DNA of 64,000 nucleotides, taken from Podarcis muralis. Lineage: Eukaryota. The notes beneath the pieces are model-generated. The model was not told the DNA's origin and made no database searches. It was given only the letters and a program-made list of their open reading frames with translations. A program made the translations under genes and the position numbers. Shown piece by piece: positions 4,381 through 53,205 of this stretch (position 1 is its first letter; every line of letters begins with the position of its first letter). The stretch spans positions 63,426,001 to 63,490,000 of the forward strand of contig NC_135658.1 of NCBI RefSeq assembly GCF_964188315.1, in the 5' to 3' direction.

Positions 4381-4396
4381 ACCTAACTAGCTTCTT

Positions 4397-4502
4397 TGTT
4401 TAGGGAAGTTTTTAATGTCTGGTGTTTTATTGTATTTTTAATATTTTGTTGGAACCTGCCCAGAGTGGCTGGGAAAGCCGAGCCAAATGGGCGGGATATA
4501 AA

Positions 4503-4560
<58 letters not shown>
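4397..4560 (+). mobile_element. L2-type LINE 3' end with (ATT)n tail
   Basis: gtttagggaagtttttaatg...gcccagagtggctggg...gggcgggatataaat + (ATT)n; same 3' UTR as the RT-bearing fragment at 50820-51287. Confidence 0.8.
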
Positions 4561-4562
<2 letters not shown>

Positions 4563-7500
4563 ACTCTCCTTGAATTTCTCCTTTCATCTGCTTTCTTGTC
4601 TTCTTGTTGTCAAAGGACATTAAAAAGCTATTATTCTGCATGTTTAATGAAGGAATATCTTAGTGTCCTGTAGTTGCAGAGCAACATGGGAAAGTCTGTA
4701 GATGATTGATGACCATAAGCCATAAATCTTCTTTTAATAAAAATACGGAATGCTATTAAAACTATGCTTTGCTCATATGTTAGTTTTGAAGACAAGCAGT
4801 TGTATGGGCTGGTAAAAGGGGGGAATCCAATTATAGAAGAGTAGCTGTATTATCCGGTACCAGATTGCTGATCAACCTTCTAGCATCCAAAAATGAAGTT
4901 GACTGCTGTCTACTGAAGTACATATTTTAGCAAAGTTAAAATTACTTCTATACAATGCAGCCTGAACTTGTTATGCATCCAGCATTCACAAAGACAGCTC
5001 ATAATTATGAAATCAACATTTCCCCTTCCCTGCCAACTCCATCATAATCTGAGCTCACAACTCAACTGAAGTTTATATCTAGCTCATACCTAACTTGCCA
5101 AGTTGCCACCAGGTAGCCTTTCCTGCTGTTACCACCCTTTCTCAAACAACTTATCTATGAAAACTGGGGTGGAACAGGAAACAGAAAAGGATGTCTGGTG
5201 GTAGTGGATGGCAGCCACCAACAAGCTCTCCCCTCTACTGATTCTCTTGCTTTTTTTGAGAAGCGGGTAGAAGAAGCAAAGAGGTGTTGTGGGGAGGAGG
5301 TAGGTATAGATGGTTCAGTCTACTTTCAATCTGTGCCACTTTCTTGTGGTAAATGATGCGTTCATCCTGTCCCTTTTCCACATGCATCTGTGATTTCTTT
5401 TTTTAGAAAAACTGCACACAAAAATATAGTTTTGACAGCATTTTTCATAAAATACACATTTTTGTATACATTTCCCTTAAAACAGAGGGAAATGTAGAGG
5501 GGAGGCGCTGGGTACACTTGCCTGAGGCTTTGGAAGGCTAAGCCGGCCAGGGGGGTGGGTGCTGGAGACCGTCTGCTTTTTCAGTTGAGTTTATAACTTT
5601 ATTTTAACAAGACTCCTGCCCTGGGCCTGCCTTAAAATATTATTTTTGGTTTTAATTTCATCTGAAATTGCAAATTTTTTGTAATTTCTGTATGCATTTT
5701 GAGAATTGTATCATAAAATTGGGAGACATTTAACGATCTATGTATTTGTCTGGAAAGAGAGAATCAGGTCAATTTGTTTACAGGTTTAGACTGGGATGGG
5801 GGAGGAATACCCAAGCATTTGTAGTGAGATGTTTCCTCAGGTATGACAAAATTCTGAGCCTTCTTGGAAAACTTTTGGTAAAACACTGAGATCTCCAGGA
5901 AAGCTATGAAAAGCCAAGCTAAAAAGGAGATGAATTTTGGAAACCTATGCATCCCTACTTTGAGCCATTCCCAGTCACATACCTGCATATTACCACATGA
6001 CATCACAGGACAAACCTGATGTATGTGCATTCCAGCCCATCAGTTTGGTAGTCATTTCCACAATACTCTTCTCCATTGCTGAATTCACAAGAATTACTGA
6101 TGTGTACCTACTGTTGTATCCATAGAAGGCTGGGACATATGTTATGCCTTCCATATGATTGTATCCCCAGGAATGGTTGTGACAGAGTAAATGAAGGCAT
6201 ATTTTGAGTTCCATTTGTTTATGGTGAATCATGCTTCAGCTCATTTTACGGCTCTTAATTGAGATCTGTAGAGGGTTACCTATTAAATCCTATGCTACCA
6301 TAAACAAATTTGTGTTACCTGATGTCATTTTATTAGGATATTTTCCTTTCTTACTCCCCTTTTCTCATTATCTATGTGTAAAATAAGAATATTTAACAAA
6401 GTAGTTTATGAATATCCAAGATTACTTCTATTTTGTCACTCAATCATTGCCAAGATTAATGAGAACCAGTGCAGTAAATAATTGCTCTGAGCTGTTGAAC
6501 ACATCATCATTCTACTTGCTTATAGGGGAACACATCTTATCATAGTTCTTATACATGATTAATGCTGCTATACTAAATTTTCTTGAGTCTAGCAGAATCT
6601 GCCAGAGGAGTTCTGTTCTCATATTAGTACCATGGCCAAAATAAAGCAGAATCCAGAGTGGACTCACTTTTCTCAGTGGTAATGTTGACAGACATGAGCT
6701 TAAGTAGATCCAATTCACAAAAATCATTTTTGATATCGTTTTAATATCATTTATGAAAGCTATTCTCCTATAGGTATAGTTGTCTTCAAATTTAATGACT
6801 TATCCTTTATAAAAAAAAGAACCAAAATAAGTTATAGAACCTAATCTCCCACAATATGAAAAATTAACATTATGAATTCAGAATGGTTCTATTTGGTTAC
6901 AAAGTACCAGAGGTTTTTAAAATGTCATTTTTAATGGCTCAGAATAATCCTCGCTGAGGAATAAAAACTCATGAGTTTTTTATCATTATTTGCAACAGAA
7001 AGTTCTTTTAGATTTGAATAACATTGCTATTAGAAATAAGGACATCTGACTTTATCCTGGTTGGAAAAATATTTTCCACCAGAGAAAACAGAAGCTATAA
7101 ACTGACATGGAAGAATATTTGTTGATGACCATGTCAGCATCATTTTTTTTGACTAATCTTGTATTTCTCTCTCCCCTACCCCACATTAATATTAGAAACT
7201 GTTATTGTGTAACTTTTTTTGTTTTAGATACATTTGAACAATAATATATGAGTATAATACTGTAACCAAGTTATCACTATACTCTGTATGCAGACACTCC
7301 AATCCAAACAGTAACAATATGGATATGAAGCTGGCTTTTCCATTTGTATGTATGCCTAGCTGGATAGAAAATTGTGCATGCATCACACATGATTTCCCAG
7401 GCAATCCAGCAACTGGGGGCTGCATGTGCATAGCACTTTTGGGTAGGAGTGTGCATCAGAGTCGGATGAACCCCAAATCCTTAGGTGAAGCGCAATGCCT

Positions 7501-8168
7501 TGGGGTGATCTTGGATTATCAGAGGTGAAGTGGGATTTCTATGAAGCAGCACAAGTTGAAACAGGTACCACTGAAGCATTACACGATATAGACATCAAAA
7601 ACTGCACCAGACAAGCATCTGCTGAAAGCGAAAGCAATGCCTCTAAGCTTACAATGAGGCAATAATGCCATAGGGTGGAATAATGGGGAAAGAGAGAGCA
7701 AACCGCAGAGTGGAGAGGGGGCAGAAGGTGACTCACTGATCTAGCTTGTCATCAGACGGAATGAGCTCCTTCATTATAAGATCTTGCTTATAATTAGAGG
7801 AAATGGTACCGGTGCTCTCTAATATCAAAGTTTTGGTTAAGAAATGTTGATGGAGTGCTTAATTGACATCACTGTCAGTGGAGGCTGGGATTGATAGCTG
7901 TTGGGTGTGTGTGTGTGAGAGTGTGATGTCCTCCAGAGGTGAAGCTCAAGTCCTATTTGTTTTCAATTTGGCAGACCTCTCTTGTGTGCTATTTACAGGC
8001 CACTTGCCAAAAACACACACACAAAACCAATGAGGAGACAAATTGATTCTTTTACTCTTCCTAAAACTGTAACTGTTGCTCTTGTGGGAAAACTACTGCT
8101 GCTAACCTTCTGAAATTTGGCAGGACTCATGCCCTCAGAAGGAATTACCTTACCTGCAAATTTCAGCC

Positions 8169-8171
<3 letters not shown>

Positions 8172-8225
<54 letters not shown>

Positions 8226-8226
8226 T
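8172..8226. repeat. Compound (CT)n(GT)n microsatellite
   Basis: Seen directly. Confidence 0.98.
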
Positions 8227-9877
8227 ATGACATGCTTCATCCACTTTTTCCAAAATACCCTGCCTTTTGACCCTCACAAGTATTTGTCTTTTCCCCTTTA
8301 AGATACTGTAAATCTAGGTTCCTACACCTCCAGATTTTGGATACCTGACAGACTACATGGTCGCTCCACTTGTATTAATGCTGTGCTCCTTGGAGTACCT
8401 GGACCATGCAGGGATGGCTGACCCTCAGTTTGGGGGCCTGATCTGCCCCCCCCCCAAGCAAACCTGGAGAATGAGCAGCCTATACCACATGGAGACGTTA
8501 CATTGTCCTTGCTATCCTCTACACACAATGTGAATTGATTTTTCGCAGAGGTAGAATGTCTGAATAGGGCTTAGGAGACTTTCTAAAATCAGCTTCAGAA
8601 CTAGAGAGTGCACATCATGTTGCAGTTTCCAGTTCCTTTCATTAATTAACATATTTCCCTTCCATTACCAATTCACTCTGCTAAAACTGCAGGCAAGGAA
8701 CTCTTGATGTGACATGTATAATAGTGTCATATTCTTTTTATGCTGCATGGGCACATGCACAATCCCATCAAGACTGCTTTTCTGCTGTGCATGTTTGTAT
8801 CAGCAATGCAGAAAGACCCAAATGAATGGAAAGAATGAAAAGGTGTGGGCTTCTGAATGCATGCACAGCCTTCACCATGAGATAGAGGTGGAATCTACAC
8901 ACATATAAAAAAAAGTTCTGAAAATGCTTTTTTTTAAGTGTTTTTAAAAATACATTGAATTTTCCATAAGGCTCACCATCACCATCTTGTGTCACATTGT
9001 ATATTGCACTCAAAACACACTTAAAACATTTTCTTTGCCCCTGTATAGCTGAGTCAGAAACAGGAACAGATTGCGATAGTGTATTGGTTTCACTTTGGAA
9101 ACAAGATTGTGGATAAATGAGGATGGGGTAATTCTGGAAGCATTTCTATTAAAAATCAAATAGGAGCATCCCTCTGAAAGGCTGGGAGAGAAGTCTGTGA
9201 TGGCAACTGAGCTTCCAAGGCTTCAACGACAAGGTAATAACAAAGCCTTTGGGCCTATTTCCCTTCAGTGCTCTCTCTCACAGTGTAATTTCCATTAATG
9301 TCAATAGGGGATTACAGACTTATACGGAAGAGAGTTTATCTTCCAGTGTGTGAAAGTGATTTATTACCATTAGGACTTTGGGAATAAAAAGGAACCTGGA
9401 ACCTAGAAATGTAGGGGCGTTTATCTGCTTTTAATGCAGAAGCAGCTTTATTATATGGGAGCCAAATATTTAACTTAAGCAGTTAACAAGATGTATTAAT
9501 AATATTCTCCATCTTGGGCCTGGGGGTGGGCCCCATACTCCACCTCAGCACACAAGGCTCCAAGGAGGCCTCGGAACATTGCTGCTGCCGCTCTGCTGTG
9601 AGTTTGTGGGGAGGACCGCTCCCCCCTGAAGCCCATTCTCCATCTTGGGCCCGGGGGGCGGGGCCCATACCAACCACCGCCACAACTTTGGGGACACTGG
9701 TGCTGCTGCAGCAAATTTTTAAAATGTTCTTATATATTTTAAAGCGTTGTAAAGGTGTTTTTACTTTTTATTCTGTTGTTCCACCATAAACGGTGGTTCT
9801 ATCCATGTATTTTTATTTTGTTTTGTTTTATTTTGGGTTGGGGTGGGCTGGTTGTTGAGTGGGGTGGGGATTGGTTT

Positions 9878-10294
9878 TCATAGAATCATAGAATCATAGA
9901 ATCATAGAATCATAGAGTTGGAAGAGACCACAAGGGCCATCGAGTCCAACCCCCTGCCAAGCAGGAAACACCATCAGAGCACTCCTGACATATGGTTGTC
10001 AAGCCTCTGCTTAAAGACCTCAAAAGAAGGAGACTCCACCACACTCCTTGGCAGCAAATTCCACTGTCGAACAGCTCTTACTGTCAGGAAGTTCTTCCTA
10101 ATGTTTAGGTGGAATCTTCTTTCTTGTAGTTTGGATCCATTGCTCCGTGTCCGCTTCTCTGGAGCAGCAGAAAACAGCCTTTCTCCCTCCTCTATGTGAC
10201 ATCCTTTTATATATTTGTACATGGCTATCATATCACCCCGTAACCTCCTCTTCTCCAGGCTAAACATGCCCAGCTCCCTTAGCCGTTCCTCATA
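9878..10294 (-). mobile_element. Young 5'-truncated CR1 LINE (ORF2 C-terminus, 3' UTR, (ATTCTATG)n tail)
   Basis: Minus frame reads YEERLRELGMFSLEKRRLRGDMIAMYKY...NFLTVRAVRQWNLLP...FKQRLDNHMSGVL*, typical CR1 ORF2 end; octamer tail TCATAGAA repeats at 9878-9915. Confidence 0.95.
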
Positions 10295-13200
10295 AGTTTT
10301 GTTCTGGTGTAATTGTTTCTGTTTGTTTGCTTTTATATTTTGTAAATGGAGGCGAATATGAGGCTTGGGATTCCTACTGTGGAGGGGCGAGGGAGGTATG
10401 GCGGTGGGGGCAGATGTCATAGGCGAAGGGGATCGAGATACGGATATGCTCGTACCCCTTCCAATCTGCGCCCCATCCCGAGAGACGAGGGTAGGGTGAG
10501 CAAGGATTACTCACCTCCGTCACTGGTGTTGTGCAATGCCAGGTCTATAGGCAACAAAACCGCCACCCTACGAGATTTCTTCATCTCTCAGGGGGTCGAC
10601 CTGGCCTGTGTGACGGAGACCTGGGTGCGCGAAGGGGATACTGTTACCTTACGAGAGATGGCGCCCCCGGGTTTCTCCGTCCTCCACCAGTCGCGGACTG
10701 TGGGCCGGGGGGGAGGGGTGGCATTATTAATCCGGGAAGATTGTTCTTTCAGGGCTCTACCATCGCCATCGATCCCCGGCATTGAATGTGTTGGCCTAGT
10801 GTGGGGCTCCGAGGTGAGCTTGGCTGTCTGGCTGGTGTACCGGCCACCTAGCGCACCAGCAGCCACCCTGTCAGGCCTGCTGGAGGCGGTGGCCGGCTGG
10901 GCCTTGGAGTTCCCTAACCTATTGGTATTGGGGGACTTCAACATCCATGCTGATGCCACTCCCTCCTCACAAGCTCTGGACCTGGTGTCTTCCATGGCGA
11001 CACTAGGGCTCTCCCAGTTTGTTTCGGGCCCCACACATCAAGCAGGCCACACGCTGGATTTGATCTTTGGCGTCGGTATAGATGTGATCATGTTTCCTTC
11101 GATGAAGGTGCCATGGTCTGATCACTACGCTCTGAAAGCCAGGATTGACGTTCCACCCCCACCCTGCTTAGGTGGCGAGCCGATTTGGGCTCGCCCGCGG
11201 AGGCTGATGGACCCTGATAGATTCCGTCAAGCCTTGCGGGACCTTGCTCCCCCTGGCGACTCATTGACTGAGCTTGTTGAGGGCTGGAATACCCAGCTCC
11301 TGGCAGCCATCAATGAGATCGCACCTAAGCGCCCTCTGCGACCCCGCAGAAACCGGGCTCCCTGGTTTACCGAGGAGCTCCGGAAAATGAAGCGGGACCT
11401 CAGACGGCTAGAGCGAGTATGGCGGGGTGCCCGTGACGGAGCTTCAAGAACATCTTATAGGGTTTTTATGAAAACCTATGAGATGGCAGTGAAGGCCGCT
11501 AAGAAGTCCTACTTCTCAGCCTCCATTGCATCCGCCAGCTCTCGCCCGGCGCAATTATTTAGTATAATTCGGTCTTTAACGTCCCTCGAAGGACAGCCAA
11601 ATTTAACACACAATTTGACACACAGCTGTGAGGCATTTGCAAGCTTTTTTGCGGAGAAGGTCCTGTTGCTCCGCCATGACCTCCCCGCCAATTTCGATAC
11701 AATAAAGGAACTGGAGGCCCCTCGACTGTCCTCGGGTCCAGTATTGGACCACTTTGACCGGATATCCCCAGCCGATGTGGACAGACTCCTCCAAGCTGGA
11801 AAGCCCACCACTTGTCCTCTCGACCCGTGCCCGTCCTGGCTGATTAGAGCGTGTCCAGACGAGGTGCGGGCCCCCCTGGGGGATATCATCAATTTGTCCC
11901 TTGGCACCGGGACATTCCCAGGGGAACTGAAGGAGGCAGTGGTGCGCCCGCTTTTAAAGAAAACATCATTAGATCCCTTAGATCTATCCAATTACCGCCC
12001 GGTTTCGAATCTTCCATTCCTGGGTAAGGTGATTGAGAGAGCGGTTGCGGAACAGCTTGGTAGGTTTCTGGATGAAACATCGGCTCTGGGTCCATTCCAG
12101 TCCGGCTTCCGCGCTGGTCATGGGACCGAGACGGCTCTGGTCGCCTTAACAGATGATCTCCGTAGGCAGCTGGATCGAGGCGGGTCGGGGCTGCTGATTC
12201 TTCTAGACCTGTCAGCAGCCTTCGACATGGTCGATCACGAACTCCTGGACCACCGCCTTGCCGACGTGGGGATCCAGGGCACAGCCCTTCAATGGCTGCG
12301 CTCGTTTCTCTCTGGTCGGGGACAGAGGGTGGCGCTTGGGGGGGAATTGTCATCCCGCCACTCCTTGGTGTGTGGAGTGCCTCAGGGTGCGATTCTCTCC
12401 CCGATGCTTTTTAACATCTTTATGCGCCCCCTTGCCCAGCTTGTCCGGAGTTTTGGGCTGGGCTGCCATCAGTATGCTGATGACACCCAACTCTATCTGT
12501 TGATGGATGGCCATCCTGACTCGGCCCCAGACACACTGATCAGATGCTTGGAAGCTGTGGCTGGATGGTTACGTGGGAGCCAGTTGAAGCTAAATCCTTC
12601 GAAGACAGAGGTCCTCTGGCTGGGACGGGACGATATGAGATTGAGGGGGCAACTCCCTTCTCTTGCGGGGGTGCAATTAATGCCAGCACCGTCCGTTAAG
12701 AGTTTGGGTGTAATCTTCGATACCTCCCTCTCCATGGAGGCGCAGATTGCAGCTATAACAAAGGCGGCATTTTTTCATCTCCGCCAGGCTAAGCAGTTGG
12801 CTCCTTACCTCCCTCGCCCTGACCTAGCCACTGTGATCCACGCGACGGTCACCTCCAGACTGAATTATTGTAACTCGCTCTACGTGGGGCTGCCCTTGAG
12901 ACTGACCCAGAAACTCCAGCGGGTGCAGAATGCCGCAGCGAGACTCCTTACGGGGTCTTCGCTGCGAGATCACATTCATCTGGTGCTATACCAGCTGCAC
13001 TGGCTCCCGGTGGAGTACAGGATCAGGTTTAAGGTGCTGGTTTTAACCTTCAAAGCCCTATACGGCCTAGGACCCTCGTACCTACGGGACCGCCTCTCCT
13101 GGTATGCCCCACAGAGGAACTTACGGTCTTCAAATAAAAACATCTTGAAGGTCCCAGGCCACAGAGAGGTTAGGCTGGCCTCAACTAGAGCCAGAGCTTT

Positions 13201-13487
13201 TTCGGCTGCGGCTCCAACCTGGTGGAACGCCCTGTCGCAAGAGACAAGGGCCCTGCAGGACTTGACATCTTTTCGCAGGGCCTGTAAGACAGAGCTGTTC
13301 CACCAGGCCTTTGGTCAGGGTGCAGCCTGACTCCCTCCTTTGGCAATCTCTACAAAGCTTTAGTCTATGGTTGCAATCAATTTGTATTTTAATTAATTTT
13401 TAGAATGTATTTATGATGTTGTACTGTTTTAGTGTTGTTAGCCGCCCTGAGCCCGGCTTCGGCTGGGGAGGGCGGGATATAAATAAA

Positions 13488-13538
<51 letters not shown>
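10295..13538 (+). mobile_element. L2-clade LINE, apparently complete single-ORF copy
   Basis: About 50 bp leader, 994-aa ORF, about 160 bp 3' UTR and (ATT)n tail at 13491-13538; no TSD found. Confidence 0.93.
10346..13330 (+). CDS. L2-clade LINE polyprotein: APE endonuclease + reverse transcriptase
   Basis: APE motifs LCNARS, CVTETW, YRPP, GDFN, GHTLDL, SDH; RT motifs YRPVSNLPFLGKVIER, QSGFR, LLDLSAAFD, GVPQG..LSP.LF, YADD, LNPSKTE; C-terminal LHWLPV typical of L2-like elements. No stop or frameshift. Confidence 0.95.
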   Translation: MEANMRLGIPTVEGRGRYGGGGRCHRRRGSRYGYARTPSNLRPIPRDEGRVSKDYSPPSLVLCNARSIGNKTATLRDFFISQGVDLACVTETWVREGDTVTLREMAPPGFSVLHQSRTVGRGGGVALLIREDCSFRALPSPSIPGIECVGLVWGSEVSLAVWLVYRPPSAPAATLSGLLEAVAGWALEFPNLLVLGDFNIHADATPSSQALDLVSSMATLGLSQFVSGPTHQAGHTLDLIFGVGIDVIMFPSMKVPWSDHYALKARIDVPPPPCLGGEPIWARPRRLMDPDRFRQALRDLAPPGDSLTELVEGWNTQLLAAINEIAPKRPLRPRRNRAPWFTEELRKMKRDLRRLERVWRGARDGASRTSYRVFMKTYEMAVKAAKKSYFSASIASASSRPAQLFSIIRSLTSLEGQPNLTHNLTHSCEAFASFFAEKVLLLRHDLPANFDTIKELEAPRLSSGPVLDHFDRISPADVDRLLQAGKPTTCPLDPCPSWLIRACPDEVRAPLGDIINLSLGTGTFPGELKEAVVRPLLKKTSLDPLDLSNYRPVSNLPFLGKVIERAVAEQLGRFLDETSALGPFQSGFRAGHGTETALVALTDDLRRQLDRGGSGLLILLDLSAAFDMVDHELLDHRLADVGIQGTALQWLRSFLSGRGQRVALGGELSSRHSLVCGVPQGAILSPMLFNIFMRPLAQLVRSFGLGCHQYADDTQLYLLMDGHPDSAPDTLIRCLEAVAGWLRGSQLKLNPSKTEVLWLGRDDMRLRGQLPSLAGVQLMPAPSVKSLGVIFDTSLSMEAQIAAITKAAFFHLRQAKQLAPYLPRPDLATVIHATVTSRLNYCNSLYVGLPLRLTQKLQRVQNAAARLLTGSSLRDHIHLVLYQLHWLPVEYRIRFKVLVLTFKALYGLGPSYLRDRLSWYAPQRNLRSSNKNILKVPGHREVRLASTRARAFSAAAPTWWNALSQETRALQDLTSFRRACKTELFHQAFGQGAA

Positions 13539-14901: not shown

Positions 14902-14902
<1 letters not shown>

Positions 14903-14932
<30 letters not shown>
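14903..14932. repeat. (CA)n microsatellite
   Basis: Seen directly. Confidence 0.98.

Positions 14933-14935
<3 letters not shown>

Positions 14936-22656: not shown

Positions 22657-22701
<45 letters not shown>

Positions 22702-24022: not shown

Positions 24023-24023
<1 letters not shown>

Positions 24024-24070
<47 letters not shown>
24024..24070. repeat. (GT)n microsatellite
   Basis: Seen directly. Confidence 0.98.
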
Positions 24071-24072
<2 letters not shown>

Positions 24073-28095: not shown

Positions 28096-28135
<40 letters not shown>

Positions 28136-41959: not shown

Positions 41960-42128
41960 GTCTAGACAAAATAGGATGACCCAAAACCAATTGTGGGACA
42001 CCTATTCACCTGCTCCACCTAAAATGGGCAACCAGTTAATTCCATATTATAAATGGGAGAGGCCTTCCACGCTGAAATAAAGAGACCAACTTAAAGAGGG
42101 CTGTGTAGGCCCCCAATCTGATTAAATA

Positions 42129-42389
42129 CGGTCATACCTTGGGTTACAGATGCTTCAGGTTGCGTTTCTTCGGGTTATGGACGTGCTGAAACCCAGAAGT
42201 ACCGGAACGGGTTACTTCCAGGTTTCGGCAGTCATGAATGCACAGAAGCACTAAATCACACTTTGTGCATGCGCAGAAGCACCAAATCGCAACCCATGCG
42301 TGTGCAGATGCAACGCTGCAGGTTGCGAAAGCTGCAGGTTGCGAATGTGCCTCCCGCACGGATCACATTCACAACCCGAGCGTCCACTG
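42129..42389. mobile_element. Tc1/mariner (pogo/Tigger-like) MITE
   Basis: TA on both flanks; imperfect TIRs related to 49506-49745; internal gcttcaggttg / ctgcaggttgcgaa subrepeats. Confidence 0.7.
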
Positions 42390-43410: not shown

Positions 43411-43520
43411 TTTATCTCAGAGTCATGGGTTCAAGTCCCACATGGAGCAAAAGATTTCTGCATTGCAGGGGGTTGGATTAGATGACCCTCCTTTCCATCT
43501 CTACAATTCTATGATTCTAT
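43411..43520 (+). mobile_element. Truncated tRNA-head SINE with CR1-derived tail (Squam2-like)
   Basis: B-box-like gggttcaagtccc followed by ctgcattgcagggggttggattagatgaccc...attctatgattcta. Confidence 0.7.
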
Positions 43521-44233
43521 CAGTACCCTTCCCAGTGCTTCAAAAATGGAACAGATTGCTTTGGAAGGTGGCAGACTTCACTTTGATTGGTGCATTAATA
43601 TGAAGCATAAAGATGTTTCTGTTTGCAATGAACTGCTGGTTTTCAATAGCTGGGCAATGGTTACTATTTGCTTCTGCCTTGCTGAAAGCTATGCTCCTTT
43701 ATCACCTAATAGATGGCTATATTTCTCTGGGATATTTTCTACAAAGCTGTGAATATTAGCTTCTTCAACTTGTCCCCTCAGAACCTCCTTTGCCCCCTTT
43801 CCTTGATCCAAATATGGGTGTTTTTTCTGGTGCTGCCACTGATGACACATTGTATTAACAACCCTCAAATTGCAGAAAATTTCTAATGTCCTCTTTACAC
43901 CATCACAGTAAGCCATATTCTAAAATAAAATATTGTTTATTGTGAATGAACAACATGCTGGAACAAGCTGCTGAATTGTGCCTGCTTTGCGCCTCCCCTT
44001 CCTAAGCCAGAAAACAGACCACGGAGAGGCTGTCTTAGTGTGACATGTGAACCAGCACTTGTGGTTTGTTTTTGGAATCAGTTCATGGTTTATTTAGAAA
44101 GTAACAAACCAGAAGTGCTGATTCACACAAGTGCTGACTAGTGTCAAGCCAGCAGCTCTGCGGTTTGTTGCCTATCATATGAGGAGGGGTGCAAAGCAGA
44201 AGTAATTGACCACAGGAAAATATAGTCTTACTG

Positions 44234-44444
44234 TAGGGTTGCCAGATTTGAGCTTTTTTAAAGGAAACCACCAAAATTGTTGAGCTTCTTTTTAGGAAAC
44301 CCCCAAAATTGTTGCACCAAAAAAACCCTGACTTGCCTAAGATCCAGGACAAAGTGCCACTTTTCAGAAATTCACCCCAGACATCAATTCCACCTTTTAA
44401 ATCCTAGTAATATCTGGAAAAAAATCAGACATATTGCAGCCCTA
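44234..44444. mobile_element. Non-autonomous DNA transposon (hAT-like MITE), 7-bp TSD
   Basis: TAGGGTTGCCAGAT left end, decayed ATATTGCAGCCCTA right end; CTTACTG at 44227-44233 and 44445-44451. Confidence 0.75.
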
Positions 44445-45984
44445 CTTACTGTGACATGTAACATGAGCGTCTTCATCCCCATCATTCAGCCCGGACACTG
44501 AGGGCCAGGTTTCAAAATCCTTCTGGCCTTCAGTTCCTTTTACCTGAGTGATCTGTTACTCTAATGCAAACTTTGTATCAGTTACTACTCTAGCAACTGG
44601 GTAGAATCTCCACATGTATACTGCACCCAGAAACTGGATTAAGGCAGGCATCCTACTAGCTTCCACTGGGCCTGCCCAGACACAGACTCTCCACACAGTT
44701 CCTCACTCACTTTGCAAGGCCTATAATTATATTCATGGTTTCCAGGTTCTATCCTCCTATGAACATTAGGAATCTCATCTTTTTTCATGAAATCCATAGC
44801 ATTTATTGACAGCTGAGGAGTCAGGAAAGTGACAGGTTCCCAAGGTTGGGATTTTCAAAAGGCTTCCTTTCCCTCAGCTTTCATGGTATTTTAATTTTTC
44901 ATGGCTATTGAGTAGTAAGTGCTTTGTTGGTTAGGTATGTTTGCTCTCCGCTTATACAAAAGGAAAATATCAACACCAGAGTCTGTCACAATGTGTAGAT
45001 TAGAACATTGTACTTTCCACCCTTCCCCAGTGGAGCTGTAAGCTCATCTGTAATTCACTATGCGGATCCTACTTAATGTCTAGCTTGTTTACTTTCCCGA
45101 TATCTTCCCCCACATGAATTGCTTTGCTTTATTCTAAGCTGAATATCATTTTATTCTTGCCTTCAACAAAACTCCAGTTTGTAGCTCCCCTGTTTCTTTC
45201 TAGAGTATGCTTTCTTGATTTATTCACATGTGTGGATTTGACAAATGTTATTCACATTCTGAGAATCACTGAGCTGCTGGTAAAGTCTTTGGAAAGATAC
45301 AAGAGATACAAAATGGATAATGTGGCATCTTTTACTTGGATGTAAGGCTACATAAGCTTGGAGGCTACTCCTGCAGGAAGAGAGGGAAAGGAAGGGAAAA
45401 TTCCAGCTATATAAAACATGGGTAGAAAGTAAAAATACTAATGGAATTTTACATTGCTGACCTAATCACCAGTGCTGTGACTCTTCAACGTGAACTAAAA
45501 ATACTACAAGAATTTTTTCTGCCATCATTAGGCTTGTTACAGTAATCCTCATTCTTATTCAAGCTGCGCTCATAAAGACAGCAAGATTTGTACCCCAATC
45601 TGTTTCCGAAAGCATGTTGTTCAATCAATGAGCCAAGCAATAATGTCTTGGTAAATACAGTACATATAACAAAATTCTAATGACTTCAGACCCTGTACAC
45701 ATAGATATAGACTTGGCTCTAGACTTAAGTCATGATTATGTTAATGATGACTAACAAGTCTCATTCATTTCAGTGGGTGTATTCCAAGCATGACTGAGTC
45801 TGGCTCCAAACTATAGATGTTTATATCCTGTCCTACTCTGCATGTTCCAGACAGGTTATAACGCACATGCTCAGTGTGTTTAGACTTTATGAATAGCAGC
45901 ATGGGTAAGGCTTGCCTTTATAATCATGCTTTTCTTGCATGCACTGAGACTACACACATTTTTAACATAAGTACAGAACTAATT

Positions 45985-46340
45985 GGACGCGGGTGGCGCT
46001 GTGGGTTAAACCACAGAGCCTAGGACTTGCCGATCAGAAGGTTGGCGGTTTGAATCCCCACAATGGGGTGAGCTCCCGTTGCACGGTCCCTGCTCCTGCC
46101 AACCTAGCAGTTCGAAAGCATGTCCAAGTGCAAGTAGATAAATAGGTACCGCTCCAGCGGGAAGGTAAACGGCGTTTCCGTGCACTGCTCTGGTTCGCCA
46201 GAAGCGGCTTAGTCATGCTGGCCACGTGACCCGGAAGCTGTACGCCGGCTCCCTCGGCCAGTAAAGCGAGATGAGCACCGCAACCCCAGAGTCGGTCACG
46301 ACTGGACCTAATGGTCAGGGGTCCCTTTACCTTTACCTTT
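45985..46340 (+). mobile_element. Full-length Sauria SINE
   Basis: tRNA-like head (ggtggcgctgtgggttaaa...ggtttgaatccc), body, Bov-B-like 3' end, (ACCTTT)n tail; TSD TACAGAAC(T/C)AAT at 45972-45983 and 46342-46353. Confidence 0.92.
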
Positions 46341-47129
46341 TTACAGAACCAATGTAAAAAGAGAACCAGTAAATAGAGAATAAGTAAACTGTTCAGTTTT
46401 CATATTATAACAAAATAGAACACATCTATACAGACATGAAGGAATAACCCACTTCCCTCCACTCATGAAAATAAGATTCAAAGGGTAAGTAAATATACCC
46501 CACAGCGGTTGGTCGTGTGAATCTGTGGATGCATATAGAATCATTTTCAGATACTGTACATGGGTTATAACCCAACACATTTCCATGGAGTCATTTTTCC
46601 TTTGCATTTTCCCTTTCCATTTAGTGCTTTGAGTTGTCTGGTTAGCTTTTCCATAACAGCCCTTGGCCAAACCTTCTGTTTCCAAACAGTCGATTGTAAA
46701 TTATCCAAACCTTTCAAGTTTTGAGCAATCAATTGTTGAGCTGGGATATGATCAATTCTTTGTGGGAAAGGTTCCTGTGTGCATCCTTGAAGATCATTAA
46801 TGAAGCCAGTGTGGAATACATTTACAGTCTGTTTTGTGATCAGACATATTTCCTGAAATACTGCTGCCTACATATGTTTTCATGTATTCAAATGAACACA
46901 CTGCAATGCAGAATCAATCCAGAATGAGCTTTTATTTTCCGGATGAAACTAAAAACTCAAAAAGTGCATTTCAGAAGCAAAAAATAAATAAATGCAAATC
47001 TAGATTGTGTGTGGACTAAGTAGAAAAAGCAAGTACTCAGTCACCATTGATTTTATAATAACATGTGTGCATGTAGCTTTTACCTCAGATAATCATGACA
47101 CATTAGGAAAAACTTTCTCATACTAAAAG

Positions 47130-47695
47130 CTGTTTGACCACCTTGGAAGGTGGTGGAATCTCCTTCATTGGAGATTTTAAAGCAGAGGTTGGGTGACCAT
47201 CTGTTAGGAATTGTTTAGTTGTGATTTCTGCATTGCAGGGGGGTGAACTAGATTACCCTTCACCAAAGGCAGATTTAGGAGAGCTCAGCTGGTTCGCCTA
47301 CACTTAGAAGAAGAAGAAGAAGAAGAGTTTGGATTTGATATCCTGCCTTTCACTCCCTTTTAAGGAGTCTCAAAGCGGCTAACATTCTCCTTTCCCTTCC
47401 TCCCCCACAACAAACACTCTGTGAGGTGAGTGGGGCTGAGAGACTTCAACGAAGTGTGACTGGCCCAAGGTCACCCAGCAGCTGCATGTGGAGGAGCAGA
47501 GACGCGAACCCGGTTCCCCAGATTACGAGACTACCGCTCTTAACCACTACACCATACTGGCTTCCTTAGAAAGGAAGGAGAGTGGCAGGGCGCACCAAAT
47601 GTTGGTGTTGCACAGGGCGCCACTGAAATTTGAAAGTCCGAAGTCTGCCACTGCCTTAGGGTCCATTCCAGCTCTACAATTCTATGATTCTATTA
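47130..47695 (+). mobile_element. CR1 3' end split by a nested MITE that itself holds a SINE
   Basis: CR1 3' UTR stops at ...gattaccctt (47260) and resumes at agggtcc...attctatgattcta (47657-47695). Confidence 0.75.
47310..47564 (-). mobile_element. Full-length tRNA-derived SINE (Squam3-like)
   Basis: Minus-strand head gccagtatggtgtagtggttaagagcgg (A-box) and gggttcgcgtct (B-box-like); (TTC)n tail; TSD CTTAGAA at 47303-47309 and 47565-47571. Confidence 0.9.
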
Positions 47696-47927
47696 TTCAA
47701 AGAGTGCCAGATGCCTAATACCTAACATAGTTTCAGGGTTTCTTCTTCCTCTGTTCTTTTTTCCCATCTACTGTTACAAATACCTATACCTATATCTATA
47801 TATCTCCTACACTTCAGACATTTTTATGCCACTTTCTTGGCAGGACTTCTTGATATAATGTGAACCATGAGTTAAATTACACAGTGCTTGGTCTCATGTC
47901 TTGAGGAGCACATGCCCCATGTCTGGG

Positions 47928-48345
47928 TGTTGTAAGATGCACTGGGTACCACAGCAACAGAGCAGAGGTTGAGTGTATGCTGAGTCATTCACCCTCCCAT
48001 TGGTTCAGGAATGTAGAGATGGGTACGTGTCCTGTCCTGTCCTGTTTGCTGTCAGGGTCTGACTCTGAATCTGTGAGAGTCAGCGGAAGGGGCTGTGGGT
48101 TTTAGACAGCAGTGTTAGCTGGCATGGTGATAGTGTCGGTGGATCTGTACATATGTATGTTTGCTTCAGGGACCAGAAGACCTGTATATAGACTTGTAAT
48201 GGCATAAGGCAGGATCAGTATAGTAAATGTGGTGGGGCATAAGGGGCCTGGGCGAAGGATTAACTATGGCATGTCCTAAGCTCAGGTTGGGGCCTCTGCC
48301 TGGATGGTATCTCTCACCCTGGTCACCCTGGCCTGCATCACAACA
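47928..48345 (-). mobile_element. Probable solo LTR
   Basis: Termini TGTTGT(AA)GATGCA inverted at both ends; TATATA on the minus strand near 48187; no clean TSD, so uncertain. Confidence 0.5.
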
Positions 48346-49505
48346 GGGATCAGTGCTGAACAGCTCCCAAGGAGGGGGCTGTGGTGTTTCCCAATACAGC
48401 AAAGAGCCATTCCACCAGCAAGGGCTGGGTGGAATGATAAACGGATCCTTTTCCTACTGCTGTGCCAACCCCACCTGCCTCTAAGATTTGGCCTGTTTTC
48501 CATCCAACACCTGTTGTTCTGTGTCAGTTATTCCACCACTCATATGCCACTCTTTCCCTGGGCAAAGGGATTTCATGGCTAGCCCCTATTTTTATATTTG
48601 GGAAACTCCTAAAAATCTACCTCCAAAGTTGACATTTTCTTCCATTAGGTTTCTAGGCAAGGTGGGATTTTCTGGGAAGTTTCAATGAGATTCCTGTTGC
48701 CATTTAAACATTTCTCCAGTATGACATAAATAAATTTCTTCAGCATTTGAGAAAGAAGTGTCAGGGTTGCATTTTTCATCTGGATAGCTATTGAGAAAAC
48801 CTTGAGGCACTGATATCTCAAATGTAGCATGGAAACAATTCAGAGGAAGCAGATGCTCACTGCCTACAATTGAATATTGACATGCCTGATTTGTGTGCTC
48901 ATCGGAAGGAAGATCAAGCTCCAAATGTATATTGGTTATACACCAGTTTAACTGCCATGGCTTCCCAAAAAGAATCCTGCTAATTGTAATTTGAGGAAAA
49001 GGCTGAGACCTTTTTGTTGGTGATCCAACATTCCCTGGGGACAAAGTGTGACTTTTAAGCCACTTGGGCTGCATTGAACTCAACAGGACTTACTTCTGAG
49101 TAGACAGATACAGGAATGTGTACTGTCACAGTGCAATGCAATCCAGAAGTAAGCTTCATTTAGTTCAAAGAGACTTATTCCCAGGTAAGTATATATGGGA
49201 CTTGTAGCCATAAATAGTGCCATAGTTGCATTGCTGCTTAAATCCTTCTCCTGCTTCTCATAAAATGTAAGGTTCTTGTATACTAATAAAATGCACTGGT
49301 GTTTCTGCCAACCTCTTTACATAATTGGAAAGAGGAAAGTGTTATTATATTGGGACATGAGTTCACCTTCCTTAGTAATTGTAGCTCAACTACAGACCCA
49401 TGTTCCTTGTAACATTTTCCTTTCGTTTAAAGTTAAATCCTGGGATAACTGGTTGCACTCCCTTTCTTTTAAAAATTACCTTTCAGTCTGGCAAACAAAG
49501 GAATA

Positions 49506-49745
49506 CAGTGGTACCTCGGGTTACATACGCTTCAGGTTACATATGCTTCAGGTTACATACTCTGCTAACCCAGAAACCTCGGGTTAAGAACTTTGCTTCA
49601 GGATGAGAACAGAAATCGTGCAGTGGCGGTGGTGTGGCAGCAGCGGGAGGCCCCATTAGCTAAAGTGGTGCTTCAGGTTAAGAACAGTTTCAGGTTAAGA
49701 ACAGACCTCCGGAATGAATTACATACTTAACCCAAGGTACCACTG
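49506..49745. mobile_element. Tc1/mariner (pogo/Tigger-like) MITE, complete
   Basis: TIRs CAGTGGTACCTCGGGTTA / TAACCCAAGGTACCACTG; TA TSD at 49504-49505 and 49746-49747. Confidence 0.92.
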
Positions 49746-50819
49746 TACTGCCTAAAAAGGGATCATGTGCCAGGTCAAACTTTCAACTCCCCAAGCTTGC
49801 AGCCATGTAAAATAATGGTGGGAATGCCCTTTGGCATGCAAATTTTGGACTAATGTTTTTGAAAGAAATATCAAACAAATTTAAACAACCCATTCAAGCT
49901 ACCCCAAAGTAACTTCTGGTGTGGATGCTGGATGCAGTGAGAGGTTCTTTGACCCAGAAACAGAAGACACTGCAGGATTCAAACCTATCATATCTGGACT
50001 CTGTCTACTGCAAAGAAAACAACTTATAAATTATGTGTTTCTAAGAGTAAAAAAAGACACAGAACATTTCTGTGCTATTTGGTGGGATTTCAGTTCTTAC
50101 AAAACTCTTTTCCTGTCATAAATTGTGAAATTTGTCTTCCTGATGTCTTTTGCTACTTTTATTTTCCTACGTTATCTGCTGTCTCTTCATTTGGAAAATA
50201 TATATATAACCTTTATACTGCTCCTGTGTTTTGTTACTTTGATTATGTTTTCTTTTTTTTTTTTTTTGCTTGTCTGTACTTATGATTTTATATTAATACA
50301 AAATGCAATTAAAAATGCAAATAATACTGTAATAATGGGGTATGGCTTTTTCACTTGTAAGACTGTCAAAATCCCAGAAGGATAAATAAAAGACGATCCT
50401 GCTGTTCCATTTGCTAAAAGCACATACTGTCACTTTTATCTCATGTATTTCTTGTGTTCTTGCTGCATCGTTTGAGTTTATTAAATATCCTAGGGATAAT
50501 ACTCTTAGTACAGCTGTTACCAAGAACTAAAGAGAGATTTAACCAAAACAAAAACTAAGGGGAGAGATTATAAAAAAAACTGCTAGGCTTGTAACTTAGA
50601 AGTCAATAGATGAGGCCACAGCTTCCTCTATAAAAATAGCAGGGCTGCATAGCTTGAACATAACTGGTCTGAAGCATGGTCAAAAAAGTGCCCCATTTCC
50701 CTCAGTACATTCCATGCATATAATGAGGCCATTTTCCAACAATGGGAAAATATGGAACAGCCTGTGGTTTTGTGAATCTCTCATTTCATCTTTGCCTGTT
50801 CCATGCCCTGCAGATCTTT

Positions 50820-51287
50820 TTCTGGTGACTGGGAGAGGCCGCCTAGACCACATAACACCAGTCTTGAAAGACCTACATTGGCTCCCAGTATGTTTCCGGG
50901 CACAATTCAAAGTGTTGGTGCTGACCTTTAAAGCTCTAAATGGCCTTGGTCCAGTAAACCTGTAGGAGCATCTCCACCCTCATTGCTCAGCCTGGATACT
51001 GAGGTCCAGCTCCAAGGGCCTTCTGGTGGTTCCCTCACTGCAAGAAGCCAAGTTACAGGGAACCAGGCAGAGGGCCTTCTCGGTAGTAGCGCACGCCCTG
51101 TGGAACGCCCTCCCGCCAGATGTCAAAGAGATAAACAACTATCTGACGTTTAGAAGACATATGAAGGCAGTCCTGTTTAGGGAAGTTTTTAATGACTGAT
51201 GTTTTGATGTATTTTTAATCTCATGTTGGAAGCCGCCCAGAGTGGCTGGGGAAACCCAGTAAGATGGGTGGGGTATAAGTAATAAAT
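50820..51287 (+). mobile_element. 5'-truncated L2-type LINE (ORF C-terminus + 3' UTR)
   Basis: Encodes LDHITPVLKDLHWLPVCFRAQFKVLVLTFKALNGLGP, homologous to the C-terminus of the 10346-13330 ORF but a different subfamily. Confidence 0.9.
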
Positions 51288-51845
51288 TTCCACCTGACTT
51301 GGTGGGGTGGGGCCCTAACTGACTCCAGCTACGAAAGCTTAAGACTGCTGAAGAGGCCAGAAATTATCTTGGCTGTTTCTTAGCGCAAACCCAGGTCATC
51401 AAGCCTGAGTACCTCCAGCCATCACCCACCATGAACCACCATTGGCAGGATTGGCAGCAATAGCAGCAGATAAGCTCTATACTTTTACATGTGCATTTTA
51501 TATATTTAACTTCCTTTAGTAATATTTTATTTTGCAATGTCTAAGGAAAAAGTATTTTGTTAACTTTGTTTATGACAAGTAATCATAAACATGAAATACA
51601 ACATTAAAAATACACAACCAATTTTCACATCATTCTCAACAAGATCAGGGGTTGGACTAGATGACCCTCGTGGTCCTTTCCAACTTCTATGGTTGCATGA
51701 TAATAAAGATGCAAAAAACCAAACAGCCACAAAACAACCCAAATGACACCTCAACACAAAATTGTTGGTTCAGTGCTATTCTGTATTGTTTCCACATTGT
51801 TTTACGTCTGATAGATTGTGTACACGGCTTCTACATCCTTTATAT

Positions 51846-51913
51846 CAGTGTTTCCCAACCTTTTTTGGGCAAAGGCACACTTGTTTCATGAAAAAAATCT
51901 CGAGGCACACCAC
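51846..51913. mobile_element. hAT-type MITE left end (no right end seen)
   Basis: CAGTGTTTCCCAACC terminal motif typical of hAT MITEs. Confidence 0.6.
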
Positions 51914-52415
51914 AGCCCCGTGACATCAGCGCGCAGCGTCACGCCGGGAGGGACGCACGAAAGTGTAAGTTTCAATTCCCCCCCCCTTGCCTTCCTTCTG
52001 TGCCAACCGCCAAAAAGCCAAGAATCGCGGGACCGCCGGCGGAGGGGGGGAGGGCGAGCGGAGGCAGCGGCGAGCCCCGTTCCTCCCCATCCGCCCCATC
52101 CCGTGCAAGGAGCGCGAACAGGTATGAGAAGGGGGTCAAACCTGCGGGCCGGCGCCGGGGAACCTCCAAGCTTTGGGGGTGGGGGGGGAGGAGGCAGCAA
52201 AGCGAGGCAGGAAGGAGAGCGCGGCTTGGCTGGGTGAGCTTTGGCAGGGGCAGGGAATGAGAGCTGCGAGGCGGGCGCTGCGGACGGAGGCGCTGCCCGC
52301 CGAGCTCGCAGGCAGCCAGGCAGGCAGACGGCGAGAGCCCCGTGCTGGGCGGCCTCTCCTGGGAAGTTTCAAAGCTGTAGTTAACTTTTTTAGATTATTA
52401 TAAAAAAAAATGAAT

Positions 52416-52526
52416 GCTGGAGCACGATTTCTGTTCTCATTCTGAAGCAAAGTTCTTAACCCAATGTAATATTTCTGGGTTAGTGGAGTCTGTAACCTGA
52501 AGCCTCAGTTACCCGAGGTACGACTG
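52416..52526 (-). mobile_element. Half of a Tc1/mariner MITE
   Basis: Reverse complement aligns to the first approx. 115 bp of 49506-49745, then breaks off. Confidence 0.85.
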
Positions 52527-53205
52527 TCCCATGTAATGTAGTTTTGTGTTTTTGTGTTGTGAGCCTTGGATGTTAAACAGCCACCACCACCGCAGGCCCT
52601 TAAAAACAAGGTACTTTCATATTCATCTTTACTTGGAGGCAAGCCTCCCTCTTCCCAAGGGGGCCACTTCCCAATTCAGAGTGCTTGGCATCCTAAGGAG
52701 GGGAGCAGCGCTGGATTTGGGACGCTGCTGGTGGCAGAGGGGCGCAAATAACAACACTGAACAGATCCGTTGGAAAAAGCAGCTGTACCAAAATGAATTA
52801 TTGCGAAAATGAGGGATATTTGAGGGAGGGGCCGTCAAATGTTGTCCTCGCCCAGGACGCCACTTGAAGGAAGCAGCGGGGGCGGACGCGGGTTGGAATC
52901 CTCTCAGCCCGGCCTCCCTCACAGGGTTGTTGTGGGGGGTAAATGGCGGGGAGCCCCCCCGCCCCCCCCCCACCGAAACTCCTGGGAGGGAGAAAACGGA
53001 ATCCGAAAGCACTAATAATAAAAGCCAATTTATATATGTGGAGAGAGGGAGGGAACCCTGAGGCCGCGTCAGGCCCACAAAGGCGGGAAGGGGCCCCTCA
53101 GCCGCGCAGGAGGCGTCTGTCCCGCAAGAGGCCGGCAAAGGTCACCTCTGATGCCCTTGCGCCTCCCTCCCTCCATTGCGCGTGCAGCGGGGGGGCGTCG
53201 CTCAC

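What the first reader, a model, noticed from the sequence alone, without database searches (positions are those of the whole stretch)
4381..53205. FH exon 1 appears orphaned: no exons 2-10 in about 49 kb of contiguous downstream sequence
Seen: I searched both strands by eye for FH core peptides (FRIEYDTFGELKVP..KYYGAQT, LKRAAAEVN, VWQTGSGTQTNMN, SSNDTFPTAMH, GGTAVGTGLN, PENEPGSSIMP, GKVNPTQ, YDKAA) and found none, neither before the gap nor between the gap and 53205. Established: human FH spans roughly 20-25 kb with a first intron of a few kb. Inference: together with the TAG, this suggests a duplicated or translocated FH promoter plus exon 1 (promoter capture), a gene broken by rearrangement, a hugely expanded intron 1, or a mis-join. 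A visual search can miss short diverged exons.
Basis: partly seen in the sequence, partly recalled or inferred. Interest (0 to 1): 0.75.

Follow-up and report, generated by a model that had tools for sequence, protein, structure and literature searches.

The report
Decayed stray copy of FH first exon
The lone "fumarate hydratase exon 1" in this wall-lizard window is not the FH gene but one silent, mutated copy of a roughly 1-kb promoter-plus-first-exon fragment that occurs about 20 times in the genome, next to a hAT transposon end.

Summary
No fumarase core exon exists anywhere in the 64 kb on either strand: the best tblastn E-values are 2.3 and 8.2, whereas nine planted exon-sized pieces of a 57%-identical fumarase were all found.

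The exon is orphaned because this is not the FH locus.
- In a whole-genome DNA run, contigs over 52477-53434 (116 nt promoter, exon 1, about 690 nt of intron 1) have depth 170-233. Unique flanks have depth 8-13, so the fragment has about 20 copies.
- Stranded RNA reads cover the exon at 31-37x and stop at its splice donor. Every read (40-64 of 40-64) differs from the window at six exon positions, and one of these changes the TAG to CAG.

So the window copy is diverged by about 2%, partly through CpG decay, and is silent in the two RNA runs laid.

On the intron side lies a CpG-rich hAT end. Its inverted-repeat terminus CAGTGTTTCCCAACCT starts at 51846 and its left flank CTTTATAT fits the hAT target consensus. 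No right terminus or second target-site copy survives.

The scan already found a sibling copy, a 2-kb hAT in a CARMIL2 intron.

A giant intron 1 and a mis-join are not supported. I could not retrieve the true FH locus, and the FH identity of the exon rests on resemblance.

The parts
53206..53319 (-). FH-like exon 1 copy (38 codons). It translates to MYRSLRSLQRLSCARGVAVHAR, then a stop, then RGQPTCSRHAQPQRM. GT donor at 53205-53204.
   Evidence: All RNA reads and the multi-copy DNA contigs differ at 53213, 53221, 53243, 53253, 53270 and 53308. The 53253 difference turns TAG into CAG.
53320..53435 (-). 116 nt of 5' UTR and core promoter belonging to the repeated fragment. It holds an inverted CCAAT (ATTGG) and a CCGCCC box. 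CpG o/e is 1.09.
   Evidence: X15 contig covers 53224-53434 at depth 44.6. A homology break at 53434/53435 is seen in X1 and X15. Composition; sequence.
52517..53205 (-). About 690 nt matching the start of the intron that follows exon 1. It is part of the repeated fragment.
   Evidence: X1 contigs cover 52477-52803 (depth 233, 2 differences) and 52928-53174 (depth 170, 10 differences). Unique flanks have depth 8-13. RNA depth here is about 0.
52422..52516 (.). Fragment of a very abundant SINE-like repeat lying between the hAT part and the FH fragment.
   Evidence: Summed depth is above 1 million, with loose ends at 52419/52425 and 52502/52503. It is 83% identical to 49621-49532.
51846..52421 (+). 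Left end of a CpG-rich non-autonomous hAT element. The inverted-repeat terminus CAGTGTTTCCCAACCT lies at 51846-51861.
   Evidence: The terminus matches 15 of 16 bases of Anolis hAT-N3_AC (PMC3014272). Summed depth is 5,000-93,000, so this is a very large family. GC is 0.62 and CpG o/e 0.80.
51838..51845 (+). Eight bases (CTTTATAT) flanking the terminus. This is a candidate target-site duplication half.
   Evidence: It fits the hAT target consensus NTNTANAN listed in PMC3014272. No second copy next to a right terminus was found.
53436..53505 (.). 70 nt of CpG-rich sequence (GC 0.64, CpG o/e 0.98) of unknown affiliation, beyond the point where other copies diverge.
   Evidence: In other copies 53435 is followed instead by AAG, then T, then the hAT terminus (table 5c).
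53506..53678 (-). Squamate SINE copy, truncated at 53506.
   Evidence: It is 94% identical to 46169-46340. Depth is above 1 million, and the loose-end consensus of other copies runs on past 53506.
4381..51837 (.). 47 kb of AT-rich, CpG-poor, repeat-laden DNA without any fumarase exon or other recognisable coding exon. It includes an intact LINE ORF2.

Best explanation
The window does not hold the FH gene. It holds one member of a dispersed family of about 20 copies in Podarcis muralis. The cargo is about 0.95 kb copied from the 5' end of a housekeeping gene, most likely FH: about 116 nt of CpG-island promoter and 5' UTR, the 38-codon mitochondrial-presequence exon with its GT donor, and about 690 nt of intron 1.

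The intron side of the cargo is joined, through a SINE scrap, to the left end of an abundant CpG-rich non-autonomous hAT transposon. The family was therefore most likely spread by hAT transposase as a Pack-hAT (transduplication). The intron sequence excludes a retrocopy.

This copy has drifted about 2% from the family sequence, with many changes at CpGs. It has acquired a stop at codon 23 plus three amino-acid changes. It has lost or never had the right end of the element. It gives no detectable RNA in the two runs laid. The spliced exon-1 reads in those runs come from the real FH gene or from intact copies elsewhere.

Shown: absence of fumarase exons, multi-copy depth, read mismatches, and the hAT terminus.
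Inferred: FH as the source gene, hAT as the mobilising agent for this copy, and silencing by methylation.
For: 1. No fumarase exon in 64 kb, with a working positive control.
2. One search, run X1. Its contigs total 1.33 Gb and unique flanks sit evenly at depth 8.3-13, so I take it to be whole-genome DNA. Contigs on 52477-52803, 52928-53174 and about 53188-53303 have depths 233, 170 and 189. That is about 18-25 copies, equal over intron and exon, so it reflects DNA copy number and not expression. X15 shows the same pattern: 29.8-44.6 against 3 or less.
3. One search, stranded RNA runs X23 and X24. Depth is 31-37 on 53200-53399, all in one orientation, and 0-0.8 on 53000-53199, so the reads end at the donor. 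At 53213, 53221, 53243, 53253, 53270 and 53308 every read (40-64 of 40-64) carries the non-window letter, the same letter as the multi-copy DNA contigs. 53253 A>G makes the TAG a CAG.
4. Eight of 14 window-versus-family differences fall on CpGs of the family sequence, and six of those are TpG/CpA in the window.
5. The terminus CAGTGTTTCCCAACCT at 51846 matches 15 of 16 bases of hAT-N3_AC. The flank CTTTATAT fits NTNTANAN. In other copies the promoter-side end is followed by ACTTAAGT plus the same terminus, which fits NYYTARRN.
6. An earlier follow-up of this scan, on another piece of the same genome, reports a complete 2-kb hAT in a CARMIL2 intron carrying the same kind of cargo (946 letters) with an intact exon. 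I treated this as a lead. It agrees with what I measured here.
Against: - No right terminus and no second target-site copy exist in the window. Transposition of this particular copy is therefore not demonstrated.
- The 70 CpG-rich bases at 53436-53505 lie beyond the family boundary and are unexplained.
- Copy number comes from k-mer depth of Logan contigs, which is only a proxy.
- No contig was shown bridging the junctions at 51845/51846 or 53435/53436.
- The FH identity rests on MYRxLR at the start, an Arg-rich peptide of about 40 residues and a terminal R-M codon pair before GT. I compared these with mammalian FH from memory. I could not retrieve a lizard FH protein or the true FH locus.
- Only two RNA runs from one study were laid, so silence in other tissues is not shown.
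Confidence: 0.7

Rival explanations
1. This is the native FH locus with a giant first intron of more than 53 kb filled with transposons. Exons 2-10 would lie beyond the window start.
For: Exon 1 has a good promoter, ATG and donor. The 49 kb downstream is repeat-rich and looks like intron.
Against: - None of about 50 RNA reads per site match the window at six diagnostic exon positions.
- The presequence of an essential gene carries an in-frame stop.
- The fragment has about 20 copies.
Confidence: 0.03
2. This is an assembly artefact: a repeat copy placed or joined here by mistake.
For: The stretch 50.8-53.7 kb is a mosaic of high-copy repeats. No independent contig was shown crossing its outer junctions.
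Against: - The nearest gap is 47 kb away.
- The copy carries about 20 private substitutions and several indels relative to the family sequence. A mis-placed consensus copy would not have these.
- Unique sequence on both sides is confirmed at single-copy depth in another individual.
Confidence: 0.05
3. The fragment was multiplied by some route other than hAT transposition, such as a tandem or segmental block, or filler DNA copied during break repair. The hAT end at 51846 would then be only a neighbour or part of the duplicated unit.
For: - The window copy has one terminus only and no target-site duplication.
- In X1 a 'goes back' joint links 53435 through AAG to 51845 at depth 67. This is what head-to-tail units would give (table 5c).
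- Tan et al. 2021 find that most animal Pack-TIRs arise without transposition.
Against: - Both flanks of the terminus, here and in the other copies, fit hAT target consensus.
- An earlier follow-up describes a complete 2-kb hAT copy in another gene's intron.
- Two copies fall in the roughly 47 Mb scanned so far (729 windows of 64 kb), on different pieces, which suggests dispersal.
Confidence: 0.17
4. The exon is not derived from FH. It would be the first exon of another gene, or an element-borne exon that merely resembles the FH presequence.
For: The identity rests on a short, poorly conserved peptide. Searches with it found no fumarase.
Against: - MYRxLR at the start, the length, the Arg-rich composition and a terminal Met codon directly before the donor are the pattern of vertebrate FH exon 1. 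This is established knowledge recalled by me and was not tested here.
- The consensus form is expressed and spliced at housekeeping-like depth.
- Two independent readers reached the same name.
Confidence: 0.1

Closest known systems
Pack-TIR / Pack-hAT transduplicates of animals (Tan et al. 2021, Nat Commun, PMC8277862)
   Same: A non-autonomous hAT carries a fragment of a host gene. The cargo is GC-rich and from the 5' end, like the frog hAT-N8_XT case that carries the CAPSL 5' UTR. It is multi-copy on different chromosomes.
   Different: That survey found only 4 multicopy cases among 370 (3 in frog, 1 in alligator), a median cargo of 224 bp, and three insertions in the case it illustrates. 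Here the cargo is about 950 bp with a whole promoter, first coding exon and splice donor, in about 20 copies. The window copy itself lacks one terminus.
Sibling copy found earlier by this scan (s1-181793: 2-kb hAT in a CARMIL2 intron, same genome)
   Same: Same kind of cargo: FH-like promoter, exon 1 and intron-1 start, 946 letters against about 920-960 here. Same genome, same carrier type.
   Different: That copy is reported complete with an intact exon. The window copy has a stop codon, three amino-acid changes and no right end.
Anolis hAT-N3_AC and related non-autonomous hAT families (Novick et al. 2010, PMC3014272)
   Same: The terminus CAGTGGTTCCCAACCT compares with CAGTGTTTCCCAACCT here. 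Both have 8-bp palindromic target preferences (NYYTARRN or NTNTANAN).
   Different: These are different species and internal sequences. That paper reports filler capture for hobo elements and Helitrons, not promoter-plus-exon cargo in this hAT group.
Pack-MULEs of rice and Helitron promoter/first-exon capture in bats (recalled from the literature, not read here)
   Same: Transposons that pick up and spread GC-rich 5' gene fragments, some of which drive chimeric transcripts.
   Different: These are different superfamilies and mechanisms. No 5'-TC or CTRR-3' Helitron ends are present here, and the terminus is of hAT type.

Membership tests
Native FH (class II fumarase) gene locus | Core exons encoding the lyase fold (including the GSSxMPxKxN loop) downstream of exon 1 on the same strand | tested here: not met
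   Best tblastn E is 2.3 and 8.2 over the whole window. All 9 planted control exons were found.
Native FH (class II fumarase) gene locus | Open first exon encoding the mitochondrial presequence | tested here: not met
   TAG at codon 23 (53253-53251).
Native FH (class II fumarase) gene locus | Transcripts carry the locus's own sequence | tested here: not met
   No read matches the window at six exon sites in two RNA runs.
Native FH (class II fumarase) gene locus | Exon 1 peptide matches the species' FH protein | tested here: inconclusive
   It resembles mammalian FH exon 1 (MYRxLR at the start, RM before GT) from memory. Three routes to a lizard FH protein failed.
Native FH (class II fumarase) gene locus | RGS7-FH-KMO neighbourhood | not testable with these tools
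   No vertebrate query proteins were available. No Pfam domain other than LINE parts was found in 17 long open frames, apart from one weak GPDPase_memb match far below Pfam's cut-off. An unchecked note puts IL1RAPL1 0.82 Mb away.
Pack-hAT (transduplicating non-autonomous hAT) | hAT-type terminal inverted repeats at both ends | tested here: inconclusive
   The left terminus is present at 51846-51861, matching 15 of 16 bases of hAT-N3_AC. No right terminus was found within 3 mismatches anywhere nearby.
Pack-hAT (transduplicating non-autonomous hAT) | 8-bp target-site duplication | tested here: not met
   The left flank CTTTATAT fits NTNTANAN, but no matching copy sits beside an element end.
Pack-hAT (transduplicating non-autonomous hAT) | Cargo copied from genomic DNA of a host gene (with intron, so not a retrocopy) | tested here: met
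   Promoter, exon, GT donor and about 690 nt of intron are contiguous. RNA reads stop at the donor.
Pack-hAT (transduplicating non-autonomous hAT) | Several copies at different sites | tested here: met
   Contig depth is 170-233 against 8-13 in a whole-genome run. A second copy on another piece is reported. Separate sites for all copies were not shown.
Pack-hAT (transduplicating non-autonomous hAT) | Identifiable parental gene copy not linked to the element | not testable with these tools
   The true FH locus could not be fetched.
Helitron gene capture | 5'-TC and CTRR-3' ends with a 3' hairpin, inserted between A and T | tested here: not met
   Read by eye at both boundaries. The junction ...AACTTAAG|TCAGTG lacks CTRR, and the terminus is of hAT type.

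The most novel reading that the evidence does not exclude
Podarcis muralis may carry a recently active hAT lineage that repeatedly picks up whole CpG-island promoter plus first-exon cassettes and scatters tens of copies of each. Earlier notes name FH here, PPAT, and several others. Each copy is a ready-made start site with a splice donor. For FH it also carries a mitochondrial targeting peptide that can be spliced onto host genes.

The window copy lacks the second hAT terminus that follows 53435 in about seven other copies, and instead has 70 further CpG-rich bases. It might be a relic of the pre-mobilisation or intermediate form. If so, it would show that capture happened by two hAT insertions bracketing the FH promoter.
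Probability: 0.2. Interest if true: 0.75.

Novelty: new member of a known kind. Interest (0 to 1): 0.45.

Why it matters
For annotation, this stretch should be masked as a transposon-associated gene fragment. It should not be called as FH or as an FH pseudogene locus. The stop-codon or uORF reading of the same exon does not apply either, because the expressed sequence has CAG.

For biology, multi-copy gene-fragment capture by cut-and-paste transposons is well documented in plants but rare in vertebrates: 4 of 370 cases in the one broad survey (PMC8277862). A family of about 20 copies carrying a complete promoter, coding first exon and donor would be among the largest vertebrate examples. It offers a direct way to ask how often such cassettes create new start sites or chimeric, mitochondrially targeted proteins. 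This window adds an old, decayed and truncated member, which helps to date the family and shows the fate of copies that are not used.

Tried and rejected
1. Right terminus and target-site copy. Pattern searches with up to 3 mismatches, a local alignment of the reverse-complemented left end, and a scan for the 8-mer all found nothing.

2. Other copies through the protein collection. The 115-aa frame over exon 1 hit only SINE-derived ORFs.

3. Retrieving a lizard FH protein, which would have led to the true locus through the look-up of encoding contigs.
- (a) A profile of E. coli FumC aligned to a long LINE frame, meant to exclude bacterial-length proteins, was swamped by LINE proteins.
- (b) The two exon pieces were kept apart as separate rows and aligned to a homologue-free shadow frame of a Roseomonas plasmid. 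Another (A4) scored badly in a local test and was not searched. A5 scored 60 bits in the local test, but none of the 8000 scored candidates reached E of 1 or better.
- (c) A full HMMER scan of 1.84 billion representatives with the 30-residue N-terminal piece gave one spurious repeat protein.
- The local test target was a synthetic join, kept in scratch only, of the read-supported presequence and E. coli FumC.

4. Locating the window in the public assembly. The LINE ORF2 is not on record as a gene. A related LINE gene gave a locus of GCA_964188315.1 without any copy of the hAT or the FH fragment.

5. Other genes in the window. Pfam on 17 long open frames gave only LINE domains and one sub-threshold GPDPase_memb match. 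Rfam gave nothing.

6. A Helitron reading of the boundaries was rejected.


Full report
**What is in the sequence**

The window is lizard DNA.
- A squamate SINE lies at 53506-53678.
- A LINE ORF2 at 10346-13330 is 96% identical to a Podarcis muralis protein.

The claimed exon is on the minus strand.
- ATG is at 53319-53317, followed by 22 codons (MYRSLRSLQRLSCARGVAVHAR).
- TAG is at 53253-53251, followed by 15 codons (RGQPTCSRHAQPQRM).
- The last ATG is at 53208-53206 and runs directly into GTGAGC.

The only gap is 4181-4380. I did not try to fill it.

**Checking the observation**

I had no vertebrate FH sequence from a tool, so I used E. coli FumC from the annotated K-12 record. tblastn against all six frames of the window gave nothing better than E = 2.3. 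A second fumarase, from a Roseomonas plasmid and 57% identical to the E. coli protein, gave E = 8.2.

To show that this test can see exon-sized pieces at that distance, I ran a control.
- I cut the Roseomonas gene into nine pieces of 111-204 nt, sized like FH exons.
- I wrote them into a copy of the window.
- The E. coli query found all nine, with E from 1.8e-24 to 7.9e-5.

**What the reads say (window:50200-56199)**

*DNA run X1.* This is a run of the same organism label as most holders. Its contigs total 1.33 Gb. Unique parts of the stretch sit on contigs of depth 8.3-13, which fits a whole-genome run.
- Contigs over the exon and its surroundings are far deeper: 233 for 52477-52803, 170 for 52928-53174, and 189 for a short contig over about 53188-53303.
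- Intron and exon are equally deep, so this is DNA copy number, about 18-25 copies.
- A second, low-coverage data set (X15) shows the same contrast: 29.8-44.6 against 3 or less.

*RNA runs X23 and X24 (stranded).*
- Depth is 31-37 on 53200-53399, all in one orientation, and 0-0.8 on 53000-53199. The reads end at the donor, as spliced mRNA would.
- At 53213, 53221, 53243, 53253, 53270 and 53308, every read (40-64 of 40-64 per site and run) carries a letter different from the window. It is the same letter as in the multi-copy DNA contigs.

*What the six differences mean.* Translated by script, the expressed form is MYRSLRSLQRLSCARGAAVHARQRGPPTCSRHAQPRRM. The window copy therefore has V17, stop 23, Q26 and Q36, plus two silent changes.

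Of the 14 differences listed over 52732-53308, eight fall on CpGs of the family sequence. In six of those the window has TpG or CpA. That is the usual decay of methylated DNA. Overall the copy differs by about 2% plus a few indels.

*Conclusion from the reads.* The transcripts do not come from this locus. This locus is one diverged copy of a repeated fragment, and it is silent in these two runs.

**The neighbourhood of the fragment**

Everything from 50.8 to 53.7 kb is repeat.
- On the intron side, after a 95-nt SINE scrap (52422-52516), comes 576 nt of CpG-rich sequence that ends at 51846.
- It ends with CAGTGTTTCCCAACCT when read inward from 51846.
- This matches 15 of 16 bases of the terminus of Anolis hAT-N3_AC. 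The eight bases outside it, CTTTATAT, fit the hAT target consensus NTNTANAN tabulated in the same paper (PMC3014272).
- Summed depth there is 5,000-93,000, so the carrier belongs to a very large family.

On the promoter side, homology to the other copies stops at 53434/53435.
- In X1, a joint at depth 67 continues from 53435 through AAG into T plus the same hAT terminus. This gives ACTTAAGT before the terminus, which fits NYYTARRN.
- In the window, 53435 is followed instead by 70 CpG-rich bases and then a SINE truncated at 53506.
- I found no right terminus and no second copy of the 8-mer.

The hAT association is therefore well supported for the family. For this copy it is only half demonstrated: the copy is truncated, or it differs in structure from the others.

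**Earlier notes of this scan**

I used these as leads. The scan has met this family before on other DNA. A follow-up on another piece of the same genome describes a complete 2-kb hAT in a CARMIL2 intron with a foreign CpG-island promoter and an intact FH-like first exon, with 946 letters of cargo.

Other notes report:
- a PPAT-carrying hAT in 10-20 copies;
- several more promoter-plus-first-exon hAT elements;
- one 0.82 Mb upstream of this window, in what its reader called IL1RAPL1 intron 3.

I could not test the IL1RAPL1 note. If it is right, the window is far from the RGS7-FH-KMO neighbourhood.

The companion note on this window reads the TAG as creating a uORF. The reads contradict it: the expressed sequence has CAG.

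**Mechanism**

Most likely (0.7), the 5' end of FH was incorporated into a non-autonomous hAT. This could have happened by repair or template switching, or by two hAT insertions bracketing the promoter. The second route would explain the direct hAT terminus after 53435 in other copies.

The composite was then moved by transposase to about 20 sites. hAT elements favour 5' ends of genes and multicopy Pack-TIRs favour GC-rich cargo (PMC8277862). This makes promoter-plus-first-exon capture plausible.

The window copy then lost its right end, became methylated and decayed.

Rivals:
- non-hAT duplication of a unit that merely contains a hAT end (0.17);
- mistaken gene identity (0.1);
- mis-assembly (0.05);
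- giant intron (0.03).

**What I could not do**

I could not fetch a lizard FH protein or the true FH locus. Three protein searches and one representative scan failed.
- In those attempts the two exon pieces were always searched apart, as separate rows.
- No protein read through the stop was handed to a tool.
- A joined test sequence (read-supported presequence plus E. coli FumC) was used only inside a local script, to calibrate a profile.

**Comparison and verdict**

This is a Pack-TIR (Pack-hAT) type transduplicate, a known kind. Tan et al. found 370 in 100 animal genomes. Only four were multicopy, and the median cargo was 224 bp.

The Podarcis FH family is larger in cargo and in copy number, and I found no paper describing it. 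The window contributes a degenerate member.

The finding is correct as an observation and ordinary in its consequence for FH, because the real gene is elsewhere. It is of moderate interest as part of a lizard-wide pattern.

Noticed in passing
window 10346-13330 (+), CpG-rich block about 9.9-13.5 kb: An uninterrupted 994-aa LINE ORF2 with endonuclease and reverse-transcriptase domains. It is 96% identical to an annotated P. muralis protein that stands for 101 member sequences. It looks like a young, possibly still active LINE copy.
   Followed up: partly
window 51972-52181: RNA reads and contigs from other copies of the CpG-rich hAT family skip about 180-208 nt here and carry 16-19 other letters instead. 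The window's hAT part therefore holds an extra GC-rich insert relative to most transcribed copies. The family as a whole is transcribed on both strands (depth 70-130).
   Followed up: no
window 53436-53505: Seventy CpG-rich bases (CpG o/e 0.98) sit between the end of the repeated FH fragment and a truncated SINE. They belong to no family I could identify. They might be further FH upstream sequence that the other copies lack.
   Followed up: partly
window 55596-55667: RNA reads (30 per run, one orientation) and one contig replace 70 nt with a different 28-nt stretch. This is a variant of another transcribed repeat at 55.4-55.8 kb.
   Followed up: no
window 56770-58161 (-): A 463-aa open frame with a reverse-transcriptase domain only. 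This is a second, truncated LINE copy upstream of the FH fragment.
   Followed up: partly
tool behaviour: With an alignment as query, the search for homologous proteins listed hits of 303-1432 aa for an 856-aa first row, so the stated length window is not applied to the first row alone. The tool's MAFFT alignment A4 also differed from a local 'mafft --auto' run on the same input.
   Followed up: no
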